From positions 62,001 through 126,000 of the IMG/VR virus record IMGVR_UViG_3300031951_000001: 64,000 nt of DNA; one strand, 5' to 3'. The notes under the pieces were generated by a model. It ran no database searches. It was not told the DNA's origin and worked only from the letters and a program-made list of their open reading frames with translations. Positions 2,607-39,005 of the stretch are shown piece by piece. The translations under genes and the position numbers were made by a program. Position 1 is the stretch's first letter, and every line of letters begins with the position of its first letter.

Positions 2607-3179
2607 ATGAAACAAATAAAAACACTTTTGTTGTTTTTGTTGGTCATGATTGTTTCAGGACAAGACCAAAAGATAGACATATGCGAAGACGAATCTAAAA
2701 CAGAATATACGTATTCGATAGAGTCTAATACACCAAATACAACATTTTATTGGTACGTAGATGGTATCTATCATTTTGGACAAACCCTGACCGTCAATTG
2801 GGAAACTTATTCTCCTGGAGTCCATACAATTAAAGTTTATGGAAAAAGTGATGGATGTAGGTCAAACCCGATGGAGTTTAAAGTTTTCATTGGGGAATGT
2901 TCTTCAATCTATATTCCAAATGCTTTTACTCCAAACGATGATGGGTTTAACGATACTTGGTTTCCCCAAGGAACAGGATGGGAAAGTATAGAAGTATTAG
3001 TATTTGACAGATGGGGGGTACTTGTATTTAAGTCAGTTGACCCAAAAGGACAATGGATTGGTAACTTTAGAGGTGGAGAATATTACGTTCAAAATGATGT
3101 CTACGAATATAAGGTTACTTGGAAGGGTATTGACCGAGAACCTGAAATAATTTTTGGTCATGTTACAGTTGTTAGGTAA
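2607..3179 (+). CDS. secreted protein with gliding-motility-associated (T9SS type B) C-terminal domain
   Basis: Signal peptide; IYIPNAFTPNDDGFND..VFDRWG..W.G..VY.Y..GHVTVVR signature. Confidence 0.85.
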   Translation: MKQIKTLLLFLLVMIVSGQDQKIDICEDESKTEYTYSIESNTPNTTFYWYVDGIYHFGQTLTVNWETYSPGVHTIKVYGKSDGCRSNPMEFKVFIGECSSIYIPNAFTPNDDGFNDTWFPQGTGWESIEVLVFDRWGVLVFKSVDPKGQWIGNFRGGEYYVQNDVYEYKVTWKGIDREPEIIFGHVTVVR

Positions 3180-3234
3180 AAACATTTGATTTTTCATATT
3201 TGATTTAGTATGTTTATGTCAAATTAATAATTAT

Positions 3235-3468
3235 ATGTCATTACAGAAACTAGTATTTAACACAACAGACAAAACCGCTCGAGTTTTTTCAGCATCAATT
3301 CCGGATGAAGTAGTATTTCATTACGAAAACATATCAACCGTAAAACCTTTGGACGGTTACTATGAAATAATGCAGAGAGTTGATAGCTCAACCGCACCAT
3401 CAGGGTATTCAGCAATTCCCGTATTACGAGTACCGATTGTTAATACAAACATGGTTATTGAGAAATGA
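3235..3468 (+). CDS. hypothetical protein
   Basis: 77-aa ORF coupled to the next gene. Confidence 0.6.
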   Translation: MSLQKLVFNTTDKTARVFSASIPDEVVFHYENISTVKPLDGYYEIMQRVDSSTAPSGYSAIPVLRVPIVNTNMVIEK

Positions 3469-3986
3469 AATATAAAATCATTGTGAGTGGACGTGGCGCA
3501 GAATGCTACGTCCATTCTATTGACGAAAATCAAAAGTCGAAATTGTTTGAGTGTGATGTCGAGAATGACAATTGCGAACACGAAGAAATTATTGAAATAT
3601 TAAATAAAAATGATATCTTCGAAACCGATAATATCTATCTCGGTCCTTACAATGACCCCGAAAATTTTATAATCGAAGTATTCAACGAAAATGAGGTTAA
3701 AGTATGGTCATCAGAAAATGACCATGAATTCAAAGAAGACGAGTACGAGTTTATAATCGGAAAAGAAAATTACCTTATTGTAGAAGATTACACAAAAGGA
3801 CAATTCTTCAATTATGAGATTGAACTTGATGAAGAATTCGATTCTGATAAATTAAAGCCGGTAATTACTGAAGTTATCGATGGGATTGAAATAATCACCA
3901 AAATTAGATATGGTGAAATTGATTTGGAAGTATTTAAAGAATATGGTGATTACTGGAGTAAAGGTATCACATATTATTTATCATGA
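3465..3986 (+). CDS. hypothetical acidic protein
   Basis: 173-aa ORF. Confidence 0.65.
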   Translation: MKYKIIVSGRGAECYVHSIDENQKSKLFECDVENDNCEHEEIIEILNKNDIFETDNIYLGPYNDPENFIIEVFNENEVKVWSSENDHEFKEDEYEFIIGKENYLIVEDYTKGQFFNYEIELDEEFDSDKLKPVITEVIDGIEIITKIRYGEIDLEVFKEYGDYWSKGITYYLS

Positions 3987-4049: not shown

Positions 4050-4868
4050 TTACGCGACGTTAATCTCAAAGTTATCAACTTTGGCAACCGCGTTAGCTCT
4101 ATGTGAGCTAGTACCTCCTCCCGCATTTATATCGGCAAAATATTCCGCAGCCTCTTTTTTGTCTGTAAAGTTTGGGAAAGTTGATGCGGATTTACCTTTA
4201 GTAAAAAATGCGATTGCGATTTTTGCTGCGATTTCAGGGTCATTAACTAAATCTGGATTTTTAACTAACTCATCACCCATACCAATCATTCTACTATATT
4301 TTTCATAATTTTTAATACCGGTTAGTTGGTTGAACCCTCTACCTCTATACGTGAAACCATCGTCTCCACCTTGATTACCAACTGTTTTAGCGTAAACTAC
4401 ATTGAAAAATTTTCTCATATCACTTTTTAATGCGTTTAATTCACTATCACTATATCCGGCCACTCTTTTACCGAATATTTTTCTAATTCTACTATTGGCC
4501 GTGGTTGCGTATGAAACCTCACTTTTAGGTTTGAAATTACATTCCTTATTAATAACTGATAAAATACCTACTTGAGTATAGGGGTTTGTTATACCCGCCT
4601 CATTCATTTTATCTATTAAAAAATTTATATTTTTTTGTTGTTCAGAATCAAAATTACCAACAATTTTCACATCACCGTTTACAGGTGAACTTTTAGTGGT
4701 GCCTGTTTCCGATGGTTTTTCTTCTGATGAGCTTGGGGTTTTGGAGGGTTTCTCAAACATTTTCTTTATTGATAAAGCAAGTGCCTTTTCAATAAAAGAT
4801 TGCTCATTTATATTGTGTAGTTTTTTTATATGACTTTTTTCTTCTTCGGTAATTAATAATTTTCTCAT
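4050..4868 (-). CDS. glycoside hydrolase family 19 (chitinase/lysozyme-like) lytic enzyme
   Basis: DGFTYRGRGFNQLTGIKNY and NPDLV..P..AA motifs; N-terminal leader MRKLLITEEEKSHIKKLH. Confidence 0.8.
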   Translation of the reverse strand: MRKLLITEEEKSHIKKLHNINEQSFIEKALALSIKKMFEKPSKTPSSSEEKPSETGTTKSSPVNGDVKIVGNFDSEQQKNINFLIDKMNEAGITNPYTQVGILSVINKECNFKPKSEVSYATTANSRIRKIFGKRVAGYSDSELNALKSDMRKFFNVVYAKTVGNQGGDDGFTYRGRGFNQLTGIKNYEKYSRMIGMGDELVKNPDLVNDPEIAAKIAIAFFTKGKSASTFPNFTDKKEAAEYFADINAGGGTSSHRANAVAKVDNFEINVA

Positions 4869-7079: not shown

Positions 7080-7625
7080 ATGGTATCGATGAAACACAGT
7101 ATAAAAATGGTTGGGGAAAGCTTTAAAGACATAAAATACGCTGTTAAGCGATTTATTCGAAAAATTAAGAACGTTTTTCGATGGCTTCCCACAATTTGGA
7201 AGGATGAGGACTATGATAGTCACTTCATTAATGAAATATTAATCAAAAAACTCGAACATACCCGAGATTTCTTCTTGTCTGATAATACTCACATCCTTAA
7301 TGCTAAAGAGGTTGCTGCCGAAATTCAGGAGGCAATTGACCGTCTTCACATGACCCGTGATAGTTGGGAGTTTTATGAAGACCCGGCCATGGAGGAGATT
7401 CAGAAGAAGTGGGGGAAGAGTACATTCAATTGGATTCCGACAAATGATGGTACCGGCTCAATGTTTATGGAGATTGAACATGAGAATGTAAAAACTCCCG
7501 AGGATGAGGAACAATACTCAACCGAGTTTAGAGCCACAATGAAACAAGCTCGTAAGGATTATAGAAAAGATAAAAAAGAAGCGTATAAATTCATCGCGAA
7601 GAATATTGATAAATGGTGGGATTAA
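7080..7625 (+). CDS. hypothetical protein
   Basis: 181-aa ORF ending WWD; start uncertain. Confidence 0.65.
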   Translation: MVSMKHSIKMVGESFKDIKYAVKRFIRKIKNVFRWLPTIWKDEDYDSHFINEILIKKLEHTRDFFLSDNTHILNAKEVAAEIQEAIDRLHMTRDSWEFYEDPAMEEIQKKWGKSTFNWIPTNDGTGSMFMEIEHENVKTPEDEEQYSTEFRATMKQARKDYRKDKKEAYKFIAKNIDKWWD

Positions 7626-7636
7626 AAATTAATAAT

Positions 7637-8158
7637 ATGGAATGGTATATTGTAAGAGCACAAGCTAATCGGGAACGTAAAGTTTCAGAACGACTTCTTA
7701 AAGAAGGTGAAAAAGGGGAATTATCTGGAGTATTGGGTAGAGTTGTTGTACCGTTGGAGAAGGTATTTGCCACAAAAAACGGGAAAAAGACACAACGAGA
7801 AAAAGTATTGTTTCCTGGTTATGTATTTGTTGAGACCTCGGCAATTGGGGAACTCAAACAGGTTGTTAAAAAGATTGATGGAGCCACAGGACTATTGTCT
7901 GACAGAGCCGGTAACATCCAAGTTATTCCCGAAAATGAAGTTAGTCGTATGATTGGACTTCACGAAGAGAATAAGGCGAAAGAATTCACCGATATTTTCA
8001 GTATTGGTGATGAAGTTACGGTCGCTGAAGGCCCATTCGCATCATTCAAGGGGAATATTGAACATATTGACAAAGAAAGAGGTAAAATTAAGGTAAATGT
8101 CCTTATTTTTGGTAGACCAACATCAGTTGAACTCGAAGACACACAAATAAGAAAATGA
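7637..8158 (+). CDS. nusG: transcription termination/antitermination factor NusG
   Basis: WYIVRAQANRERKV, FPGYVFVE, KOW motif GDEVTVAEGPFASFKG, IFGRPTSVEL. Confidence 0.93.
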   Translation: MEWYIVRAQANRERKVSERLLKEGEKGELSGVLGRVVVPLEKVFATKNGKKTQREKVLFPGYVFVETSAIGELKQVVKKIDGATGLLSDRAGNIQVIPENEVSRMIGLHEENKAKEFTDIFSIGDEVTVAEGPFASFKGNIEHIDKERGKIKVNVLIFGRPTSVELEDTQIRK

Positions 8159-8935: not shown

Positions 8936-10528
8936 ATGGATAAAAAAATAAAAATTTTAATTTTATCGTCATTGGTCATAATGTCGGTATTTTTCATGGT
9001 TAAAACTGCGGTTTTAATCGAAATTATATCTAGCTCAAAATTAACAAGAGGAACGGAATATGTTTGTTTTTTATTTTTTATTCCTGTTTTTTACAATTTA
9101 ATTAGACACTACATTAAAACTAATAGGTTATATAATCAGTTTAAAGAATTTGAAAATTTTGTTGATACCTCAGTACTGGTTAGTAAGGCTGATAAGAATG
9201 GTAAGATAACATATGTTAACCAAAAATTCAGTGAAGTGTCAGGGTGGAGTTTAGAAGACGCCGCAGGTAAAGACCACCGAATAGTTAACTCAGGATTTCA
9301 TCCCAAAGAAATGTGGGAGGAAATGTATAAAACAACAATCAAAGATAAAAAAATATGGAATGCTGTCGTAACTAACAAAGCAAAGGATGGTCATCTATAT
9401 TGGGTTGATTCATATATTAAAGCCGAATTTGAAGAAAATGGAGACCTAAAAGGTTTTATGTCAATAAGATATGATGTTTCAGAAGTTAAGAAAAAAGAAC
9501 TTGAGATTAGAAACAGAATGAATGCCATCAATCAATCTAATGCGGTTATTGAGTTTGATTTGAGTGGTAATATAATGTATGCCAATAAAAATTTCTGTGA
9601 TACTATGGGATATACTATGGAAGAAATTGTGGGAAAACATCATAGTATATTTTTAAATGAGGAGTATTCAAAGTCACAGGAGTATAAAGAATTTTGGGAT
9701 ACTTTAAGAAGTGGTGATTTCATATCTGCTCAATTTATGAGAATTAAAAAGAATGGTGATGAAATTTGGTTACAAGCCACATATAACCCAATCTTTGATA
9801 ATGATGGTAAAGTTATTCGAATTATGAAAATTGCGATTGATATTACTGACAAAGTTTTACAATCCCAAGAGATAGAAAAAAAGAATACTTATTTGGAACA
9901 TGCCGCAAAAATATTGAGACACGACATGCACTCGGGTATTAACACTTACATGCCGAGGGGGTTAAGTTCTTTGGAGAGAAGATTAAAAACTGAAGACATT
10001 GAGAATTTAAAAATTGAAGCTCCGATTAAAATGATTAAGGAGGGATTAAGACACTCACAAAAAGTATATAAGGGTGTTTATGAATTTACCAATTTGGTTA
10101 AAAAGGATGTTGTGTTAAATAAAGCTGAATGTAATTTAAGAGACATATTAAATGATTATCTATCATCAACCGCATATCATAGTCAGGTTATTATTGAAGA
10201 ATTACCAACCATAGAAGTTAATGAAGCATTATTCTGTACTGCGGTAGATAACTTAATTAGGAATGGATTGAAGTACAATGATTCTGAATCAAAATTTGTA
10301 AAAATATACATGGAAGGTGATGAGTTAATGGTTCAGGACAATGGACGAGGTATAACTCAAGAAGATTTCGACCACTTATCAAAACCATACACAAGAAAAG
10401 AAGGACAAAAAGAGTCAGGAACTGGACTCGGATTAAACATATGTGTGGCGATATTACAAGAACACAAGTTTTTGGTAAGATGCGAGAAAAATGAGATAGG
10501 AACTAAACTGAAAATAAAAATAAAATAA
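8936..10528 (+). CDS. membrane-anchored PAS-PAS sensor histidine kinase
   Basis: Two N-terminal TM segments; two PAS/PAC domains; H-box LRHDMH, N-box NLIRNGLKY, G1 DNGRGI, G2 GTGLGL. Confidence 0.9.
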   Translation: MDKKIKILILSSLVIMSVFFMVKTAVLIEIISSSKLTRGTEYVCFLFFIPVFYNLIRHYIKTNRLYNQFKEFENFVDTSVLVSKADKNGKITYVNQKFSEVSGWSLEDAAGKDHRIVNSGFHPKEMWEEMYKTTIKDKKIWNAVVTNKAKDGHLYWVDSYIKAEFEENGDLKGFMSIRYDVSEVKKKELEIRNRMNAINQSNAVIEFDLSGNIMYANKNFCDTMGYTMEEIVGKHHSIFLNEEYSKSQEYKEFWDTLRSGDFISAQFMRIKKNGDEIWLQATYNPIFDNDGKVIRIMKIAIDITDKVLQSQEIEKKNTYLEHAAKILRHDMHSGINTYMPRGLSSLERRLKTEDIENLKIEAPIKMIKEGLRHSQKVYKGVYEFTNLVKKDVVLNKAECNLRDILNDYLSSTAYHSQVIIEELPTIEVNEALFCTAVDNLIRNGLKYNDSESKFVKIYMEGDELMVQDNGRGITQEDFDHLSKPYTRKEGQKESGTGLGLNICVAILQEHKFLVRCEKNEIGTKLKIKIK

Positions 10529-35216: not shown

Positions 35217-35786
35217 ATGGACTATTTTTCACCAGTAAACGGAGTAGAAGCCGAAGAAAAAACGTTTTCAAAAACAGTAGAATTTAATCCAAGGTCCGAA
35301 AGTACTATACTATCTCCTGTAGACGGAACAGTAATAGACAAAAGAGGTGAAAGTATTAAAATAGAAGGTGATGATGGACATATACTAACTTTTGATAAAG
35401 TTGGTAGAGCGTCGGTCACAAATGGAAGCAGAGTTTTTAAAAAAAGAACTGTAGTAGGATATACCAAATCAGACGATGCTCTTGAGCTTACAATTTTTAA
35501 TGACAAAAATTCTAAAGTGGATGTAAAAAAATATCTAAAAGGTGAAATCGCACCAATTACTACAGGAAATGATAAGACAGGTTCATCGACTGGTAGTAAA
35601 TTATATAAAAGTACAAATGTTACTGATGGTAAAAAAATAAGTGACTACGCTTTAGTACGAGGAGTTGTAAAAGACGTGGCACTGGCCCCATTTACCGCAT
35701 TCCAAGCTCTAACAAAAGAAAGTGTTGAGGAGTCGGAAAAAATCTTAAAGGAACAAGTCGAGAGAATCAAACAATTGATGAAATAA
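35217..35786 (+). CDS. degenerate M23-like protein
   Basis: ILSPVDGTV scaffold without zinc His ligands; ends LKEQVERIKQLMK. Confidence 0.55.
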   Translation: MDYFSPVNGVEAEEKTFSKTVEFNPRSESTILSPVDGTVIDKRGESIKIEGDDGHILTFDKVGRASVTNGSRVFKKRTVVGYTKSDDALELTIFNDKNSKVDVKKYLKGEIAPITTGNDKTGSSTGSKLYKSTNVTDGKKISDYALVRGVVKDVALAPFTAFQALTKESVEESEKILKEQVERIKQLMK

Positions 35787-35800
35787 AAAAAATTTCAGAT

Positions 35801-36074
35801 TTTGCTTGTTCCAGCAATATTTATTCTTACATTTGTAGAGGATTTGACACCTACAGGTGATGAAAGATACTCGGAAGTTAAATCTAAAAAAACTTACAAA
35901 TAAATTTGGTAGAATGAAAAAGTCACCATATATTTGTAAAAGATTTGAGACGGACAACGATTAAGATACAAGTCTCGAATCTTTAAAAAAAAGTTTAAGA
36001 AAAATTTGACAGAACGAAAAATTTGACTTAAATTTGTAAAACAATTCGGAAATGACCGAAGAAGTTCTTTGAAA
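35801..36074 (+). promoter_or_regulatory. three tandem Bacteroidota-type promoters plus boxB/boxA-like site
   Basis: TAnnTTTG at 35828, 35929 and 36029, the last two with TTTG 20 nt upstream; hairpin TTCGG-AAATGA-CCGAA then AGTTCTTTGAAA. Confidence 0.7.
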
Positions 36075-36079
36075 ATTAG

Positions 36080-36925
36080 ATTATCCATCAGGATGTTGAT
36101 GATGAGACCTTAGGGTTGATTCTGAGACAACTGTAAAAGATAATGGGCCGTGTATGGTCCTTAAATAAACTACGAAAGTAGGATAAAGTGACCTCCCCCG
36201 TGTTGAGGAGGTTGCGGTTTCGAAAGGAACTCGAGTACACAAGTGGGATATCACAAGACCTTTAGTACCGAGGGTAACACTGTAGGGAAAGTGGTCAGGT
36301 GACTTGGCAAAGTGGATTGTCAAGTTGAGGTGGGAACACCAACAAGAATAACCCATAGGAATCAAGTAAGAAATGTGGCTTCCAACTACAATATTGCGGA
36401 TTCCAATACAGAAGGGTACTTAAAACCGAAAGGTAAGGTAGAGAACGAGTGGTGTCGCTACTACCCCTAAGGAAGACCTACCAAGGTCTCTTTATGAAGT
36501 AATCTGAAAGTATGGAGATAGGGATATCTCACGGAGTAGTTTAGTATTCTGTCGCTCAAAAGGAGACGGAACTTACGGTGGACCACTACTCTGACACATC
36601 CACGACACAATCTTAAATTATTAAAAAATAATTAAAGGAAAAGTGTCCATCAGGTTTAAGTGAAAGGTCACTACCTAATCACTGGCTGTCAGTGGTACAG
36701 AAAGACCCCAAGTCCGACTGTAGTTTTACGAAAAACCTTTAATCCCGCAAGGATGAACTGGGGTGGCAACCTCGGAAAGAGTTAAGTAATAAGAGAGTAA
36801 CTTAAACCTCAAGGAGTGGTAAACCTAAAAGACCGTGACTGAGAAATACTTCTCAAAAGGAAGTGGATACGAAGGGAAACAATAATCCTTCAAAAGGTTC
36901 TCACAGAAAGCTGTAATCTCAGGCT
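36080..36925 (+). ncRNA. giant structured RNA, probably GOLLD
   Basis: About 845 nt, GC-richer than its flanks, many GNRA-capped hairpins, no credible ORF, directly upstream of a tRNA in a phage; family call from size and context only. Confidence 0.65.
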
Positions 36926-36941
36926 TCGTTTAATCTTACAT

Positions 36942-37014
36942 CGCAACTTAGAGCAGAGGCCAGCTCGTCAGGCTCATAACCTGAAGGTCGGAGGTTCGAA
37001 TCCTTCAGTTGCAA
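36942..37014 (+). tRNA. initiator-type tRNA-fMet(CAT)
   Basis: C1-A72 mismatch; anticodon arm TCAGG-CTCATAA-CCTGA; T-arm GGAGG-TTCGAAT-CCTTC. Confidence 0.85.
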
Positions 37015-37099
37015 CAAATTTACAGGTGAGCTTGTCTCACCTTTTTTTATTCTTATATTTCTTATACCATTCAGGTATAAACAATAATTCTTTTATTTT

Positions 37100-37399
37100 A
37101 TGGAAATGTTTTATTTCACTTTAGGTGTTCTTACGGTTATTGCTCTGACATTAGTTGGGGTGGTAGTTTTGGGAATGGGTAGAGTTCAAAAGCTCCAAAG
37201 AGAAATGCAGAGTTACAGAGAACAGTACAGATGGGATTTTGAAAATAACCATCGTCGTTTTGATGAACAACAGAGAATAACTCAAGAAAGATTCTCGGAT
37301 TTCTACAGAGATTTTGAAAAACTTCACCAAGAATGTACAAGTTACACGGACAAAAGAATTGATAAATTTATTTATCAATACAAAGAGAAAGAAAGTTAA
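37100..37399 (+). CDS. N-terminal TM plus coiled-coil protein
   Basis: 99 aa; hydrophobic residues 4-26. Confidence 0.65.
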   Translation: MEMFYFTLGVLTVIALTLVGVVVLGMGRVQKLQREMQSYREQYRWDFENNHRRFDEQQRITQERFSDFYRDFEKLHQECTSYTDKRIDKFIYQYKEKES

Positions 37400-38519: not shown

Positions 38520-38550
38520 AAAGAAAACCCCTCCGAGTGAGGGGTTTTTT
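38517..38550 (+). repeat. 34-bp direct repeat, copy 2 (terminator between the GT and tmRNA)
   Basis: Identical to 37397-37430. Confidence 0.9.
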
Positions 38551-38557
38551 CTTACGG

Positions 38558-38932
38558 TGGAGGTACGGGGAGTCGAACCCCTTCCTACTCATCTTAACTA
38601 CTAAGCCCTACATGTTTAGGTCAACATCGCTTCTCAATGTTCCGAAATATTGGTTTTTGAGCTCTCAAAACCACAAACGAGTTGTGTTTCTTTTCGGGTA
38701 GAAACCACACCACAGTACGAGCTTCTGTTCCAAGGTTGTATGCTTACCGACCCGTTTTGTATCCCAATCCTAGATTAGGCTACTGAAATGTTCTCTTCAG
38801 TACGGATAAGACCAACTGCAGAGAGTTTGTTGATAACGTTGCCGTTTATCGTGTGAACCAGTTTTACAAGGTTAGTTCAGCCTCGACATGCTCCGAGTAA
38901 TTAACTATGCTAGTCAATTCCAAGTTACCCCC
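38558..38932 (-). ncRNA. ssrA: tmRNA
   Basis: 5' GGGGGTAACTTGGAATTGAC; 3' GGTTCGACTCCCCGTACCTCCA with G3-U70; tag frame 38843-38775 after ATAAAC. Confidence 0.93.
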
Positions 38933-39005
38933 ATATTTCAAATAACGTTCTACAAATATATACATAGTTTATTGGTAATCCAAGTATTTATATAAAAAGT
39001 TTTTA

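What the first reader, a model, noticed from the sequence alone, without database searches (positions are those of the whole stretch)
35801..36074. rRNA-operon-style leader driving the giant RNA
Seen: three -7 boxes 101 and 100 nt apart, each followed by a hairpin (GATTTGAC/GTTAAATC, AGATTTGAGAC/GTCTCGAATCT, TTCGG/CCGAA). The last hairpin is followed by AGTTCTTTGAAA. Known: rRNA leaders have tandem promoters and boxB-boxA sites that recruit Nus factors including NusG. Inference: the phage transcribes the giant RNA and tRNA-fMet at rRNA-like levels with Nus antitermination, possibly using its own NusG (7637-8158).
Basis: partly seen in the sequence, partly recalled or inferred. Interest (0 to 1): 0.7.

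Follow-up and report, generated by a model that had tools for sequence, protein, structure and literature searches.

The report
rRNA-style leader of phage GOLLD operon
A 322-kb phage that probably infects Flavobacteriales-like bacteria drives its giant GOLLD RNA and an initiator-type tRNA from a copy of its host's ribosomal-RNA leader (tandem promoters, 5' hairpins and a boxA site), which suggests the phage uses the host's rRNA transcription machinery to make a very abundant structured RNA.

Summary
Three Bacteroidota-type promoters have -7 boxes (TAnnTTTG) at 35828, 35929 and 36029, each with a -33 TTG 19-20 nt upstream. Each is followed by a hairpin that starts near the predicted start site. 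The third hairpin is followed by AGTTCTTTGAAA (36063-36074).

The 'giant RNA' is GOLLD (Rfam, 317 bits). It is followed by an initiator-like tRNA-Met and an intrinsic terminator.

I compared this with 16S leaders from Flavobacteriales genomes.
- 22 of 24 carry GTTCTTTGA upstream of 16S.
- They hold 2-3 tandem -33/-7 promoters, median 107 nt apart.
- Each promoter is followed by a hairpin.
This is the same architecture as in the phage.

All 17 related phage GOLLD loci that had upstream sequence keep the proximal promoter and the boxA. Most also keep a hairpin between them, though its sequence varies. The same module precedes phage tmRNA and tRNA genes.

In seven metatranscriptomes the GOLLD body is 100-fold or more above a neighbouring mRNA, and the leader is absent from the stable RNA.

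The phage encodes NusG but not NusB or S10. Start-site usage, Nus binding, read-through and any role of the phage NusG remain inferred.

Hairpin 2 belongs to a widespread, apparently undescribed phage hairpin family with a conserved loop.

The parts
35805..35835 (+). Promoter P1: -33 (C)TTG 35805-35808, 19-nt spacer, -7 box TACATTTG 35828-35835. Predicted start about 35840.
   Evidence: 8th best of 644,744 positions with the host rrn promoter matrix. Conserved in L004, L009, L011, L013, L016 and L018. Start-site rule: -7 box at -12 to -5 (PMC9723704).
35841..35884 (+). Hairpin HP1: stem GATTTGAC/GTTAAATC, 28-nt loop holding GGTGATGAAAGATACTCG.
   Evidence: -9.4 kcal/mol, z -1.5. The loop is conserved and the stem differs in L021 (GGTTTGA/TCAAATC).
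35905..35936 (+). Promoter P2: -33 TTTG 35905-35908, 20-nt spacer, -7 box TATATTTG 35929-35936. Predicted start about 35941.
   Evidence: 9th best. A nearly identical 40-mer stands twice before tRNA genes in phage LR745206.1.
35941..35982 (+). Hairpin HP2: 11-bp stem, with loop motif AACGATTAAGATACAA at 35956-35971. It belongs to a widespread phage hairpin family with a conserved loop.
   Evidence: z -5.6. (all six stem pairs show compensatory changes across 34 hairpins). (49 bits; the only copy in the 322-kb genome).
36005..36036 (+). Promoter P3: -33 TTTGACA 36005-36011, 20-nt spacer, -7 box TAAATTTG 36029-36036. Predicted start about 36041. This is the proximal promoter conserved across the related loci.
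   Evidence: 11th best. Present upstream of the boxA in all related GOLLD loci with upstream sequence.
36045..36060 (+). Hairpin HP3 in the boxB position: TTCGG/CCGAA with a 6-nt loop.
   Evidence: Weak alone (z -0.6). A hairpin of varying sequence occupies this place in relatives: ATCGG/CCGAT, ATTCGAA/TTCGAAT, GACGGGA/TCCCGT, GTTACTC/GAGTAAC. Host rrn leaders have the same feature.
36063..36074 (+). boxA-type element AGTTCTTTGAAA (core GTTCTTTGA 36064-36072), 35 nt after the start of the P3 -7 box.
   Evidence: The core GTTCTTT is invariant in 17 related loci, followed by GA in 15 and AA in two near-identical ones. The same 9-mer is in 22 of 24 Flavobacteriales 16S leaders and 18 of 24 leaders in the phylum sample. 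It matches published boxA consensus sequences.
36078..36925 (+). GOLLD RNA. The 5' domain is conserved from AGATTATCC at 36078. The Rfam model covers the 3' half, 36532-36925.
   Evidence: RF02032, 317 bits. (alignment with LR745206.1). RNA contigs cover about 36096-36900 in seven metatranscriptomes.
36942..37015 (+). tRNA-Met (CAT) with initiator features: C1xA72 mismatch, A11:U24, and two of the three G:C pairs at the base of the anticodon stem.
37024..37050 (+). Intrinsic terminator (7-bp stem followed by TTTTTTT) that closes the operon.
7613..8158 (+). Phage NusG homologue (181 aa; alternative start at 7637).
   Evidence: Pfam NusG and KOW. (TIGR00922, 139.4 bits, cut-off 135.7). A 46%-identical homologue is in LR745206.1.
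38933..38960 (-). A second stable-RNA leader in the window: -7 box TATATTTG (38960-38953), then the boxA variant GTTATTTGA (38946-38938), directly before the phage tmRNA (38932-38555).
   Evidence: (tmRNA, 94.6 bits).

Best explanation
Window 35805-37050 is one stable-RNA operon built like the rRNA operons of the phage's Bacteroidota host.

Three tandem promoters for the host's main sigma factor (-33 TTG, -7 TAnnTTTG) lie about 100 nt apart. They start transcripts that each begin with a hairpin. After the last promoter and hairpin, the nascent RNA shows a boxA element (GUUCUUUGA).

Inferred mechanism: host NusB-S10 binds this boxA and assembles the rrn-type antitermination complex on RNA polymerase, with NusG from the host or possibly the phage. 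The untranslated transcript of about 1.0-1.2 kb is then completed without Rho-dependent termination and may be helped to fold. It comprises GOLLD plus an initiator-type tRNA and ends at the terminator at 37024-37050.

The leader is then removed or decays, and only the GOLLD body accumulates.

Shown here: the sequence elements, their match to host-order rrn leaders, their conservation in related phages, and high accumulation of the GOLLD body without the leader.

Inferred: which start sites are used, Nus factor binding, antitermination, processing rather than decay, and any part played by the phage NusG.
For: The RNA:
- It is GOLLD, followed by tRNA-Met and a terminator.

The promoters:
- All three sites have a -33 TTG at 19-20 nt. 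They rank 8th, 9th and 11th in the whole genome against a matrix of 48 host-order rrn promoters.
- Many other phage genes carry the same promoter type directly before their ATG.

Comparison with the host order:
- 22 of 24 Flavobacteriales 16S leaders hold GTTCTTTGA about 55-220 nt before 16S, often followed by nnnATTGA as in the phages.
- These leaders have on average 2.3 tandem promoters, median spacing 107 nt (the phage has 101 and 100).
- Each promoter is followed by a hairpin: mean MFE -5.9 against -3.2 kcal/mol for control segments.
- 18 of 24 leaders across the phylum sample carry the 9-mer.

Published boxA:
- E. coli UGCUCUUUAACA.
- B. subtilis AUGAUCUUUGAAA, placed after a 5' hairpin and bound by NusB (PMC13753749).
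- Gamma-proteobacterial GYTCTTTAANA, with a critical C at position 4 (10.1101/091223). The phage element keeps that C.

Conservation in phages:
- All 17 related GOLLD loci with upstream sequence keep the boxA (GTTCTTTGA in 15, GTTCTTTAA in two near-identical loci). Flanks, hairpin sequence and promoter number (1-3) vary.
- In L006 an ORF has been inserted between promoter and boxA, yet the boxA stays directly before GOLLD.

Generality:
- The promoter-(hairpin)-boxA module also precedes phage tmRNA (L056), tRNA-Met (L115), other GOLLD variants (L057, L080, L117), and an unidentified RNA of about 400 nt elsewhere in this genome.
- The window's own tmRNA has a variant boxA.
- Short tRNA transcripts in the window lack it.

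Expression:
- Seven metatranscriptome runs come from seven different studies. Contigs cover about 36096-36900 at word depths of 10^2 to 6x10^3. The leader (35762-36085) has none.
- Contigs identical to the window in run X10 give depths of 350-705 for GOLLD and 3.5 for the downstream ORF.

Nus factors:
- The phage has NusG but no NusB or S10.
Against: - No start site is mapped. Only assembled contigs were available, so use of P1 and P2, or even P3, is inferred from sequence.
- In the true RNA libraries the leader, including the boxA, is absent from RNA contigs. Its transcription is therefore not directly seen. The only runs that cover it (X1-X4) are labelled ambiguously and are probably DNA.
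- Depths sum related phages and reflect RNA stability as well as synthesis.
- HP1 and HP3 are not stable beyond shuffled controls.
- GTTCTTTGA is not rare in this AT-rich genome: I counted 8 copies in the list, against about 4 expected from base composition by my own arithmetic. The argument therefore rests on position and conservation.
- The host is inferred only from promoter type, boxA flanks and one NusG relative (Fluviicola, 39% identity).
- The attempt to model NusB-S10-boxA was not folded and gives no evidence.
Confidence: 0.72

Rival explanations
1. P3 alone is the working GOLLD promoter. On this reading the P1-HP1 and P2-HP2 units are separate functional modules: small hairpin RNAs, or binding sites for a phage or host factor that recognises the conserved loops. 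They would not simply be extra rrn-style promoters. This overlaps with the main explanation and does not exclude it.
For: - HP2 belongs to a hairpin family with an invariant loop and freely varying stems.
- That family also occurs as two-hairpin units of about 110 nt ending in a T-run, away from any boxA.
- Relatives have 1, 2 or 3 promoters, but always the proximal one.
- HP1 and HP2 loops share AGATAC.
Against: - Neither HP1 nor HP2 is followed by a T-run in the window, so transcripts from P1 and P2 should run on into GOLLD.
- Host rrn leaders also have 2-3 tandem promoter-hairpin units at the same spacing.
- In 31 of 93 hairpin instances a boxA follows at fixed distances of about 9, 83-96 or 174-181 nt. 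The hairpin therefore appears to be a regular part of these leaders.
Confidence: 0.3
2. The promoters are real, but GTTCTTTGA is not a Nus-loading site. It would instead be a processing or folding signal for the mature 5' end of stable RNAs, shared with host pre-rRNA.
For: - The element lies 4 nt before the conserved GOLLD 5' domain, and directly before tmRNA 5' ends.
- The leader is missing from accumulated RNA.
- BoxA function has not been tested in Bacteroidota, as far as my literature searches show.
Against: - The sequence matches boxA elements shown to bind NusB in E. coli and B. subtilis, including the critical C.
- In host leaders it lies 55-220 nt from the 16S 5' end, a variable distance that fits a loading site better than a cleavage site.
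- I found no conserved leader-trailer pairing between the GOLLD flanks, by inspection.
Confidence: 0.12
3. HP3 plus the U-rich GUUCUUU acts as a weak intrinsic terminator or attenuator that limits GOLLD transcription.
For: The pattern scan lists 36045-36060 with its tail GAAGTTCTTT as terminator-like.
Against: - The stem has only 5 bp and the T-run is interrupted and offset.
- The hairpin is replaced by unrelated or much larger structures, or by an ORF, in relatives, while GTTCTTTGA stays.
- GOLLD accumulates to very high levels downstream.
Confidence: 0.03
4. The pattern is a chance product of AT-rich intergenic sequence or a decayed tandem repeat with no function.
For: - TAnnTTTG is only slightly enriched genome-wide (559 against about 503 expected).
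- Two of the three hairpins are not significant by energy.
Against: - The three sites rank 8th, 9th and 11th in the genome with the host rrn promoter matrix.
- The elements are conserved in 17 related loci while their flanks diverge.
- The architecture matches host rrn leaders.
Confidence: 0.02

Closest known systems
Flavobacteriales (Bacteroidota) rrn leaders, as read here from 24 genomes
   Same: - 1-3 tandem -33 TTTG / -7 TAnnTTTG promoters about 100 nt apart, with an A-rich spacer and an upstream A-tract.
- A hairpin starting near +1 of each promoter.
- GTTCTTTGA after the last promoter, often followed by nnnATTGA.
   Different: - The phage boxA lies closer to the last -7 box (35 nt against a median 61.5).
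- The phage hairpins have their own sequences and conserved loops, whereas host hairpins are short and GC-rich.
- The product is GOLLD plus a tRNA, not rRNA.
E. coli rrn P1-P2 with the boxB-boxA-boxC leader and the rrn antitermination complex (NusA, NusB, S10, NusG, S4, SuhB)
   Same: Tandem promoters, hairpin-then-boxA order, an untranslated structured product, and removal of the leader from the mature RNA (background: PMC10931766, PMC10250234, PMC13753749).
   Different: - The boxA is GUUCUUUGAAA against GCUCUUUAACA.
- The promoter type differs (Bacteroidota sigma A).
- No boxC was identified.
- No protein binding was tested here.
B. subtilis rrn leader: a 5' hairpin immediately followed by boxA (AUGAUCUUUGAAA), bound by NusB (PMC13753749)
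   Same: - A small hairpin at the transcript's 5' end with boxA directly after it.
- 10 of 11 boxA positions are identical (GAUCUUUGAAA against GUUCUUUGAAA).
   Different: Different phylum and promoter type; a phage operon rather than a cellular one.
Phage lambda nut sites (boxA plus the boxB hairpin bound by N protein)
   Same: - A phage uses a boxA and a nearby hairpin on nascent RNA to make RNA polymerase termination-resistant with host Nus factors.
- A hairpin with a conserved loop (the HP2 family) is reminiscent of boxB.
   Different: - The order is hairpin then boxA, as in rrn (lambda has boxA then boxB).
- No N-like protein was identified.
- The target is a stable-RNA operon, not delayed-early genes.
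boxA elements outside rRNA (the suhB 5' UTR, CRISPR arrays)
   Same: A boxA placed at the head of a transcript that is untranslated, or whose translation is blocked (10.1101/091223; PMC13753749).
   Different: - Those cases are cellular and gamma-proteobacterial.
- Here the element is phage-borne, in Bacteroidota, and comes with a full rrn-like promoter array.
GOLLD RNA loci as described in the literature
   Same: Phage-borne, next to tRNA genes (env-38 lies downstream of a tRNA-Met), with a conserved 3' half and a variable 5' half (10.1101/2024.12.08.627333).
   Different: The papers I could search do not describe the leader, promoters or a boxA for GOLLD.

Membership tests
GOLLD RNA (Rfam RF02032) | Match to the covariance model above the gathering score | tested here: met
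   317.4 bits against 150, window 36532-36925. The 5' domain aligns with LR745206.1 and 18 IMG/VR loci.
Bacteroidota sigma-A promoter | -7 box TAnnTTTG with a -33 TTTG/TTG about 19-20 nt upstream | tested here: met
   All three sites meet this. They rank 8th, 9th and 11th genome-wide with the host rrn promoter matrix. Consensus from PMC9723704.
Bacteroidota sigma-A promoter | Transcription actually starts about 5 nt after the -7 box | not testable with these tools
   Only assembled contigs of public runs were available. No contig from a true RNA library covers the leader.
rrn-type antitermination leader (boxB-boxA) | A boxA sequence matching the consensus, including the critical C | tested here: met
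   GTTCTTTGAAA matches GYTCTTTAANA at 10 of 11 positions with C4 kept. It matches B. subtilis GAUCUUUGAAA at 10 of 11. It is identical to the 9-mer in 22 of 24 Flavobacteriales 16S leaders.
rrn-type antitermination leader (boxB-boxA) | Position in the transcribed leader, after the promoter(s) and before the structured RNA, with a hairpin upstream | tested here: met
   The boxA lies at predicted +23 to +34 of P3, 3 nt after HP3 and 4 nt before the GOLLD 5' domain.
rrn-type antitermination leader (boxB-boxA) | Tandem promoters | tested here: met
   Three in the window and 1-3 in relatives. Host leaders have a mean of 2.3 at a median spacing of 107 nt.
rrn-type antitermination leader (boxB-boxA) | NusB-S10 binds the boxA RNA | not testable with these tools
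   The complex prediction with Flavobacteriales NusB, S10, phage NusG and the leader RNA was not folded. This is no evidence either way.
rrn-type antitermination leader (boxB-boxA) | boxA-dependent read-through of Rho-dependent terminators | not testable with these tools
   This needs reporter or in vitro transcription experiments.
Lambda-type nut site | boxA followed by a boxB hairpin that a phage N-like protein binds | tested here: not met
   The order is hairpin then boxA. No N-like protein was sought or found. The HP2-family loop could be a protein site, but that is untested.
Bacterial initiator tRNA | C1xA72 mismatch, A11:U24, three G:C pairs at the base of the anticodon stem | tested here: inconclusive
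   The first two features are present. Only two of the three G:C pairs are present (A29-U41 replaces the third).
NusG (TIGR00922) | Score above the curated cut-off; NGN plus KOW domains | tested here: met
   139.4 bits against 135.7. Pfam NusG 5e-18 and KOW 2e-5.

The most novel reading that the evidence does not exclude
The hairpins that open the transcripts, above all the HP2 family with its invariant loop AACGAUU(C/A)AGAUACAA, may be a phage-specific counterpart of boxB. On this reading a phage-encoded factor, possibly the phage NusG or an unrecognised N-like protein, binds the loop. Together with host NusB-S10 on the adjacent boxA it would build a dedicated, rrn-ordered antitermination and folding complex for phage stable RNAs (GOLLD, tmRNA, tRNA arrays). 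A more speculative version is that the loops imitate the 16S '790 loop' (GGAUUAGAUACCC) and titrate a ribosome-assembly or initiation factor.
Probability: 0.2. Interest if true: 0.8.

Novelty: new member of a known kind. Interest (0 to 1): 0.6.

Why it matters
GOLLD is one of the largest bacterial or phage non-coding RNAs. It is now known to assemble into a 14-mer RNA cage, but its function and its mode of expression are unknown.

If it is made from a copy of the host's rRNA leader, three things follow:
- The phage likely uses the cell's most powerful transcription programme: strong tandem promoters, Nus-factor antitermination, and the RNA-chaperoning rrn elongation complex. This would explain the very high RNA levels and offers a way for an RNA of roughly 850 nt to fold correctly.
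- There are concrete handles for experiments: boxA and promoter mutants, and reporters in Flavobacterium.
- boxA-mediated control would extend to phage stable-RNA genes (GOLLD, tmRNA, tRNA) and to Bacteroidota, where it has not been studied.

The conserved-loop hairpin family found on the way is a separate candidate RNA motif in phages.

Tried and rejected
- The genome search with 'relatives' is not available for a virus record.
- The annotated phage collection holds only one real relative of the locus, LR745206.1, which is unannotated. All other hits are tRNA-only matches.
- Literature searches found nothing on a Bacteroidota boxA or on GOLLD promoters.
That MAG has no 16S and only a truncated NusB, so I used other genomes of its order.
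- The complex prediction with NusB, S10, phage NusG and boxA RNA was counted but not folded. It gives no evidence.
- An Rfam scan at E up to 5 over the leader and the GOLLD 5' half gave only a chance-level hit.
- The pattern TTTGTA...AGTTCTTTGAA in viral contigs is mostly chance. In the loci read, 68 of 82 matches have no full promoter; only the 14 with a full -33/-7 promoter were used.
- I looked for a leader-trailer helix joining the GOLLD flanks. Only a 6-bp AGATTA/TAATCT match is possible in the window and it is not conserved in LR745206.1, so I rejected it (by eye).
- I looked for an antisense target of the HP1 and HP2 loops in the GOLLD operon and in host rrn loci. Nothing longer than 8 nt turned up, which is chance level.
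- The covariance model of the HP2 family does not recognise HP1. A common origin of the two hairpins therefore rests only on the shared AGATAC.
- Exact 5' end of GOLLD: the contigs start at 36096, 36102 or 36162. These are likely graph break points at strain variants, so the mature end is only bracketed between about 36064 and 36096.
Full report
WHAT IS THERE

The window is part of a 322,372-base virus record rated complete, with 34% G+C. Between the stop of an upstream ORF (35786) and the next ORF (37100) lies about 1.3 kb without a credible reading frame.

- Rfam places GOLLD RNA at 36532-36925 (317 bits; the model covers only the conserved 3' half).
- ARAGORN and Rfam place a tRNA-Met (CAT) at 36942-37015.
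- A strong intrinsic terminator follows at 37024-37050.
- The tRNA has a C1xA72 mismatch and A11:U24, as bacterial initiators do. It has only two of the three G:C pairs at the base of the anticodon stem.

THE OBSERVATION

| Element | Sequence | Coordinates |
|---|---|---|
| -7 box 1 | TACATTTG | 35828-35835 |
| -7 box 2 | TATATTTG | 35929-35936 |
| -7 box 3 | TAAATTTG | 36029-36036 |
| HP1 | GATTTGAC/GTTAAATC | 35841-35884 |
| HP2 | AGATTTGAGAC/GTCTCGAATCT | 35941-35982 |
| HP3 | TTCGG/CCGAA | 36045-36060 |
| boxA-type element | AGTTCTTTGAAA | 36063-36074 |

- The boxes are 101 and 100 nt apart. Each has a TTG or TTTG 19-20 nt upstream.
- TAnnTTTG with a -33 TTTG is the promoter of the main sigma factor of Bacteroidota. 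In Flavobacterium psychrophilum the box sits at -12 to -5 (PMC9723704). This predicts starts at about 35840, 35941 and 36041, so each hairpin begins within the first five nucleotides of its transcript.
- The same promoter type stands directly before many ATG codons in this genome. The phage therefore uses host-type promoters generally.
- HP2 is far more stable than shuffles (z -5.6). HP1 and HP3 are not.

COMPARISON WITH HOST rRNA LEADERS

The phage NusG found one relative in the species-genome collection, a Fluviicola MAG of the order Flavobacteriales. I used that genome as a centre and fetched 16S loci from its order.

- 24 leaders had usable upstream sequence. 22 carry GTTCTTTGA about 55-220 nt before 16S, one has ATTCTTTGA and one has GTTCTTTGT.
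- The motif is often followed by nnnATTGA. The same is seen in the related phage LR745206.1.
- The same leaders hold on average 2.3 tandem -33/-7 promoters, with median spacing 107 nt (range 77-175).
- Each promoter is followed within a few bases by a hairpin. Upstream units often carry decayed boxA copies.
- In a wider sample of the phylum, 18 of 24 leaders carry the 9-mer.
- A weight matrix of 48 host-order rrn promoters ranks the three phage sites 8th, 9th and 11th of 644,744 positions in the phage genome. Other stable-RNA promoters of the phage rank 4th, 7th and 15th.
- Published boxA sequences are UGCUCUUUAACA (E. coli) and AUGAUCUUUGAAA (B. subtilis). The B. subtilis element sits just after a 5' hairpin and is bound by NusB (PMC13753749). 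The gamma-proteobacterial consensus is GYTCTTTAANA, with a critical C at position 4 (10.1101/091223). The phage element fits all of these.

CONSERVATION IN RELATED PHAGES

- A conserved stretch of the GOLLD 5' domain retrieved 18 IMG/VR loci. LR745206.1 (635 kb) came from the phage collection.
- All 17 IMG/VR loci with upstream sequence have the boxA (GTTCTTTGA in 15, GTTCTTTAA in two near-identical loci) within about 100 nt of the conserved domain. It is followed by the start of GOLLD (AGATTATCC) and preceded by a -33/-7 promoter.
- Between promoter and boxA there is a hairpin whose sequence differs among loci: TTCGG/CCGAA, ATCGG/CCGAT, ATTCGAA/TTCGAAT with an 85-nt insertion, GACGGGA/TCCCGT. 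In LR745206.1 it is GTTACTC/GAGTAAC.
- In L006 a small ORF has replaced the hairpin, but the boxA remains.
- The number of tandem promoters is 1, 2 or 3.
- In LR745206.1 the boxA precedes GOLLD even though a tRNA-Met lies upstream of it. A second promoter-hairpin-boxA module opens the tRNA cluster.

THE MODULE IS GENERAL FOR PHAGE STABLE RNAs

- A pattern scan for a -7 box followed by the boxA in viral contigs gave mostly chance hits. The 14 matches with a full promoter precede GOLLD (L057, L080, L117 and others), a phage tmRNA (L056) or a tRNA-Met (L115).
- In the window itself the tmRNA on the minus strand (38932-38555) is preceded by TATATTTG and the variant GTTATTTGA.
- Elsewhere in this genome (about 19.9 kb, minus strand) the same promoter plus GAAGTTCTTTGAG opens an unidentified RNA of about 400 nt. 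A second promoter with the variant opens a row of tRNA-like genes.
- Short tRNA transcripts in the window have the promoter but no boxA.

EXPRESSION

Public runs that hold the sequence are mostly freshwater metatranscriptomes. Only assembled contigs could be laid.

- In seven true RNA libraries from seven different studies, contigs cover about 36096 to 36900 at word depths from tens to about 6,000.
- The leader (35762-36085), the tRNA and the flanking ORFs have none or almost none.
- In run X10, contigs identical to the window give 350-705 for GOLLD and 3.5 for the ORF at 37082-37327.
- GOLLD therefore accumulates at least 100-fold above a neighbouring mRNA of the same strain. The leader is not part of the stable RNA, as with rRNA leaders.
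- These data cannot show where transcription starts. Depth also mixes synthesis, stability and related phages.

Nus FACTORS

- The ORF at 7613-8158 is a NusG (TIGR00922, 139.4 bits against 135.7; NGN and KOW domains).
- LR745206.1 has a 46%-identical one. The other relatives are fragments, so their lack of a hit says nothing.
- The phage has no NusB or S10. Host-order genomes have both.
- If the boxA works as in E. coli and B. subtilis, it is read by host NusB-S10. Whether the phage NusG takes part is open.
- A structure prediction of the complex was not run by the tool.

MECHANISM PROPOSED

1. Host RNA polymerase with sigma A starts at up to three consensus-like promoters.
2. The nascent RNA forms 5' hairpins and exposes the boxA.
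3. Host NusB-S10 and the other Nus factors convert the polymerase into the rrn-type complex. This complex resists Rho and is reported to chaperone RNA folding (PMC10931766, PMC8632103).
4. GOLLD and the initiator-type tRNA are completed up to the terminator.
5. The tRNA and GOLLD are cut out, and the leader decays.

Steps 1, 3 and 5 are inferred. The sequence elements, their homology of arrangement with host rrn leaders, and the accumulation pattern are shown.

AN UNEXPECTED SIDE RESULT

- The loop of HP2 (AACGATTAAGATACAA, 35956-35971) is not private to this phage. The 16-mer, with A or C at position 8, occurs in at least 120 viral contigs.
- I read 122 instances. In 93 it sits in the loop of a hairpin.
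- 58 of those 93 hairpins start right after a -7 box. 31 are followed by a T-run. 31 are followed by a boxA at fixed distances of about 9, 83-96 or 174-181 nt.
- Across 34 hairpins all six stem pairs show compensatory changes.
- A covariance model finds exactly one copy in this genome (HP2, 49 bits) and one in LR745206.1.
- In L279 this hairpin sits 2 nt before the boxA, in the boxB position.
- Rfam has no match. No antisense target was found.
- The loop resembles the 16S 790 loop (GGATTAGATACCC in host 16S) with a one-base insertion. I regard this as a lead only.

VERDICT

It is a new member of a known kind: boxA-type leaders, here on phage stable-RNA operons in Bacteroidota. It has a possibly new component in the conserved-loop hairpin. 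Function remains to be tested.

Noticed in passing
window 35941-35982 (HP2); IMG/VR loci L206-L315: HP2 belongs to a widespread phage hairpin family with an invariant loop, AACGATT(C/A)AGATACAA, and freely varying stems. It occurs at transcript 5' ends, in tandem promoter arrays, directly before a boxA (L279), and as two-hairpin units of about 110 nt ending in a T-run (L210, L224, L280, L281). There is no Rfam match.
   Followed up: partly
window 38555-38960, minus strand: The phage encodes a tmRNA (94.6 bits). Its own -33/-7 promoter and a boxA variant (GTTATTTGA, with the critical C replaced by A) lie directly before its 5' end. A terminator follows at about 38520-38548.
   Followed up: partly
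L003 (G000:C1:17000-21500), minus strand, about genome 18,600-19,935: This is a second stable-RNA region of the same phage, outside the window. A promoter plus GAAGTTCTTTGAG is followed by about 400 nt of unidentified, GC-richer RNA ending in a tRNA-like T-arm and acceptor. Then come a second promoter with GTTATTTGA and three tRNA-like genes (GTCAGG...CCTGAC acceptor stems) with long insertions that ARAGORN and Rfam do not call.
   Followed up: no
L005 and L014 (about 100 nt before the GOLLD 5' domain); L017: An element of about 85 nt starting AAGGAGGTCTGGTGTGAACC is inserted into the loop of the boxB-position hairpin. A similar element follows another promoter in L017. It may be a small structured RNA of its own.
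   Followed up: no
L006:12733-12995: In this relative a small ORF of about 70 codons (starting ATGACAACAACAAAAGAC) lies between the proximal promoter and the boxA, in place of the hairpin. The boxA still directly precedes GOLLD.
   Followed up: no
L002 (LR745206.1) 3361-3470 and 4561-4660: Two near-identical tRNA-like genes (GGTCGGTTCGTCTAATGG...CTACCGACTAC) have a long insertion in the anticodon region. They flank the tRNA-Met and GOLLD. ARAGORN does not call them. ARAGORN does report a nearby tRNA with a two-base anticodon call at 3109-3196.
   Followed up: no
window 8936-10528: A 530-aa ORF just downstream of the NusG and a metallophosphoesterase-like ORF looks, by eye, like a membrane-anchored PAS sensor histidine kinase. 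I did not check it against Pfam.
   Followed up: no
runs X1-X4: Libraries labelled 'METAGENOMIC RNA-Seq' cover the leader (35810-36112) at about a third of the GOLLD depth, while the flanking genes are near zero. If these are truly RNA, the leader is transcribed. If they are DNA, the pattern only reflects higher conservation of the leader and GOLLD among related phages.
   Followed up: no
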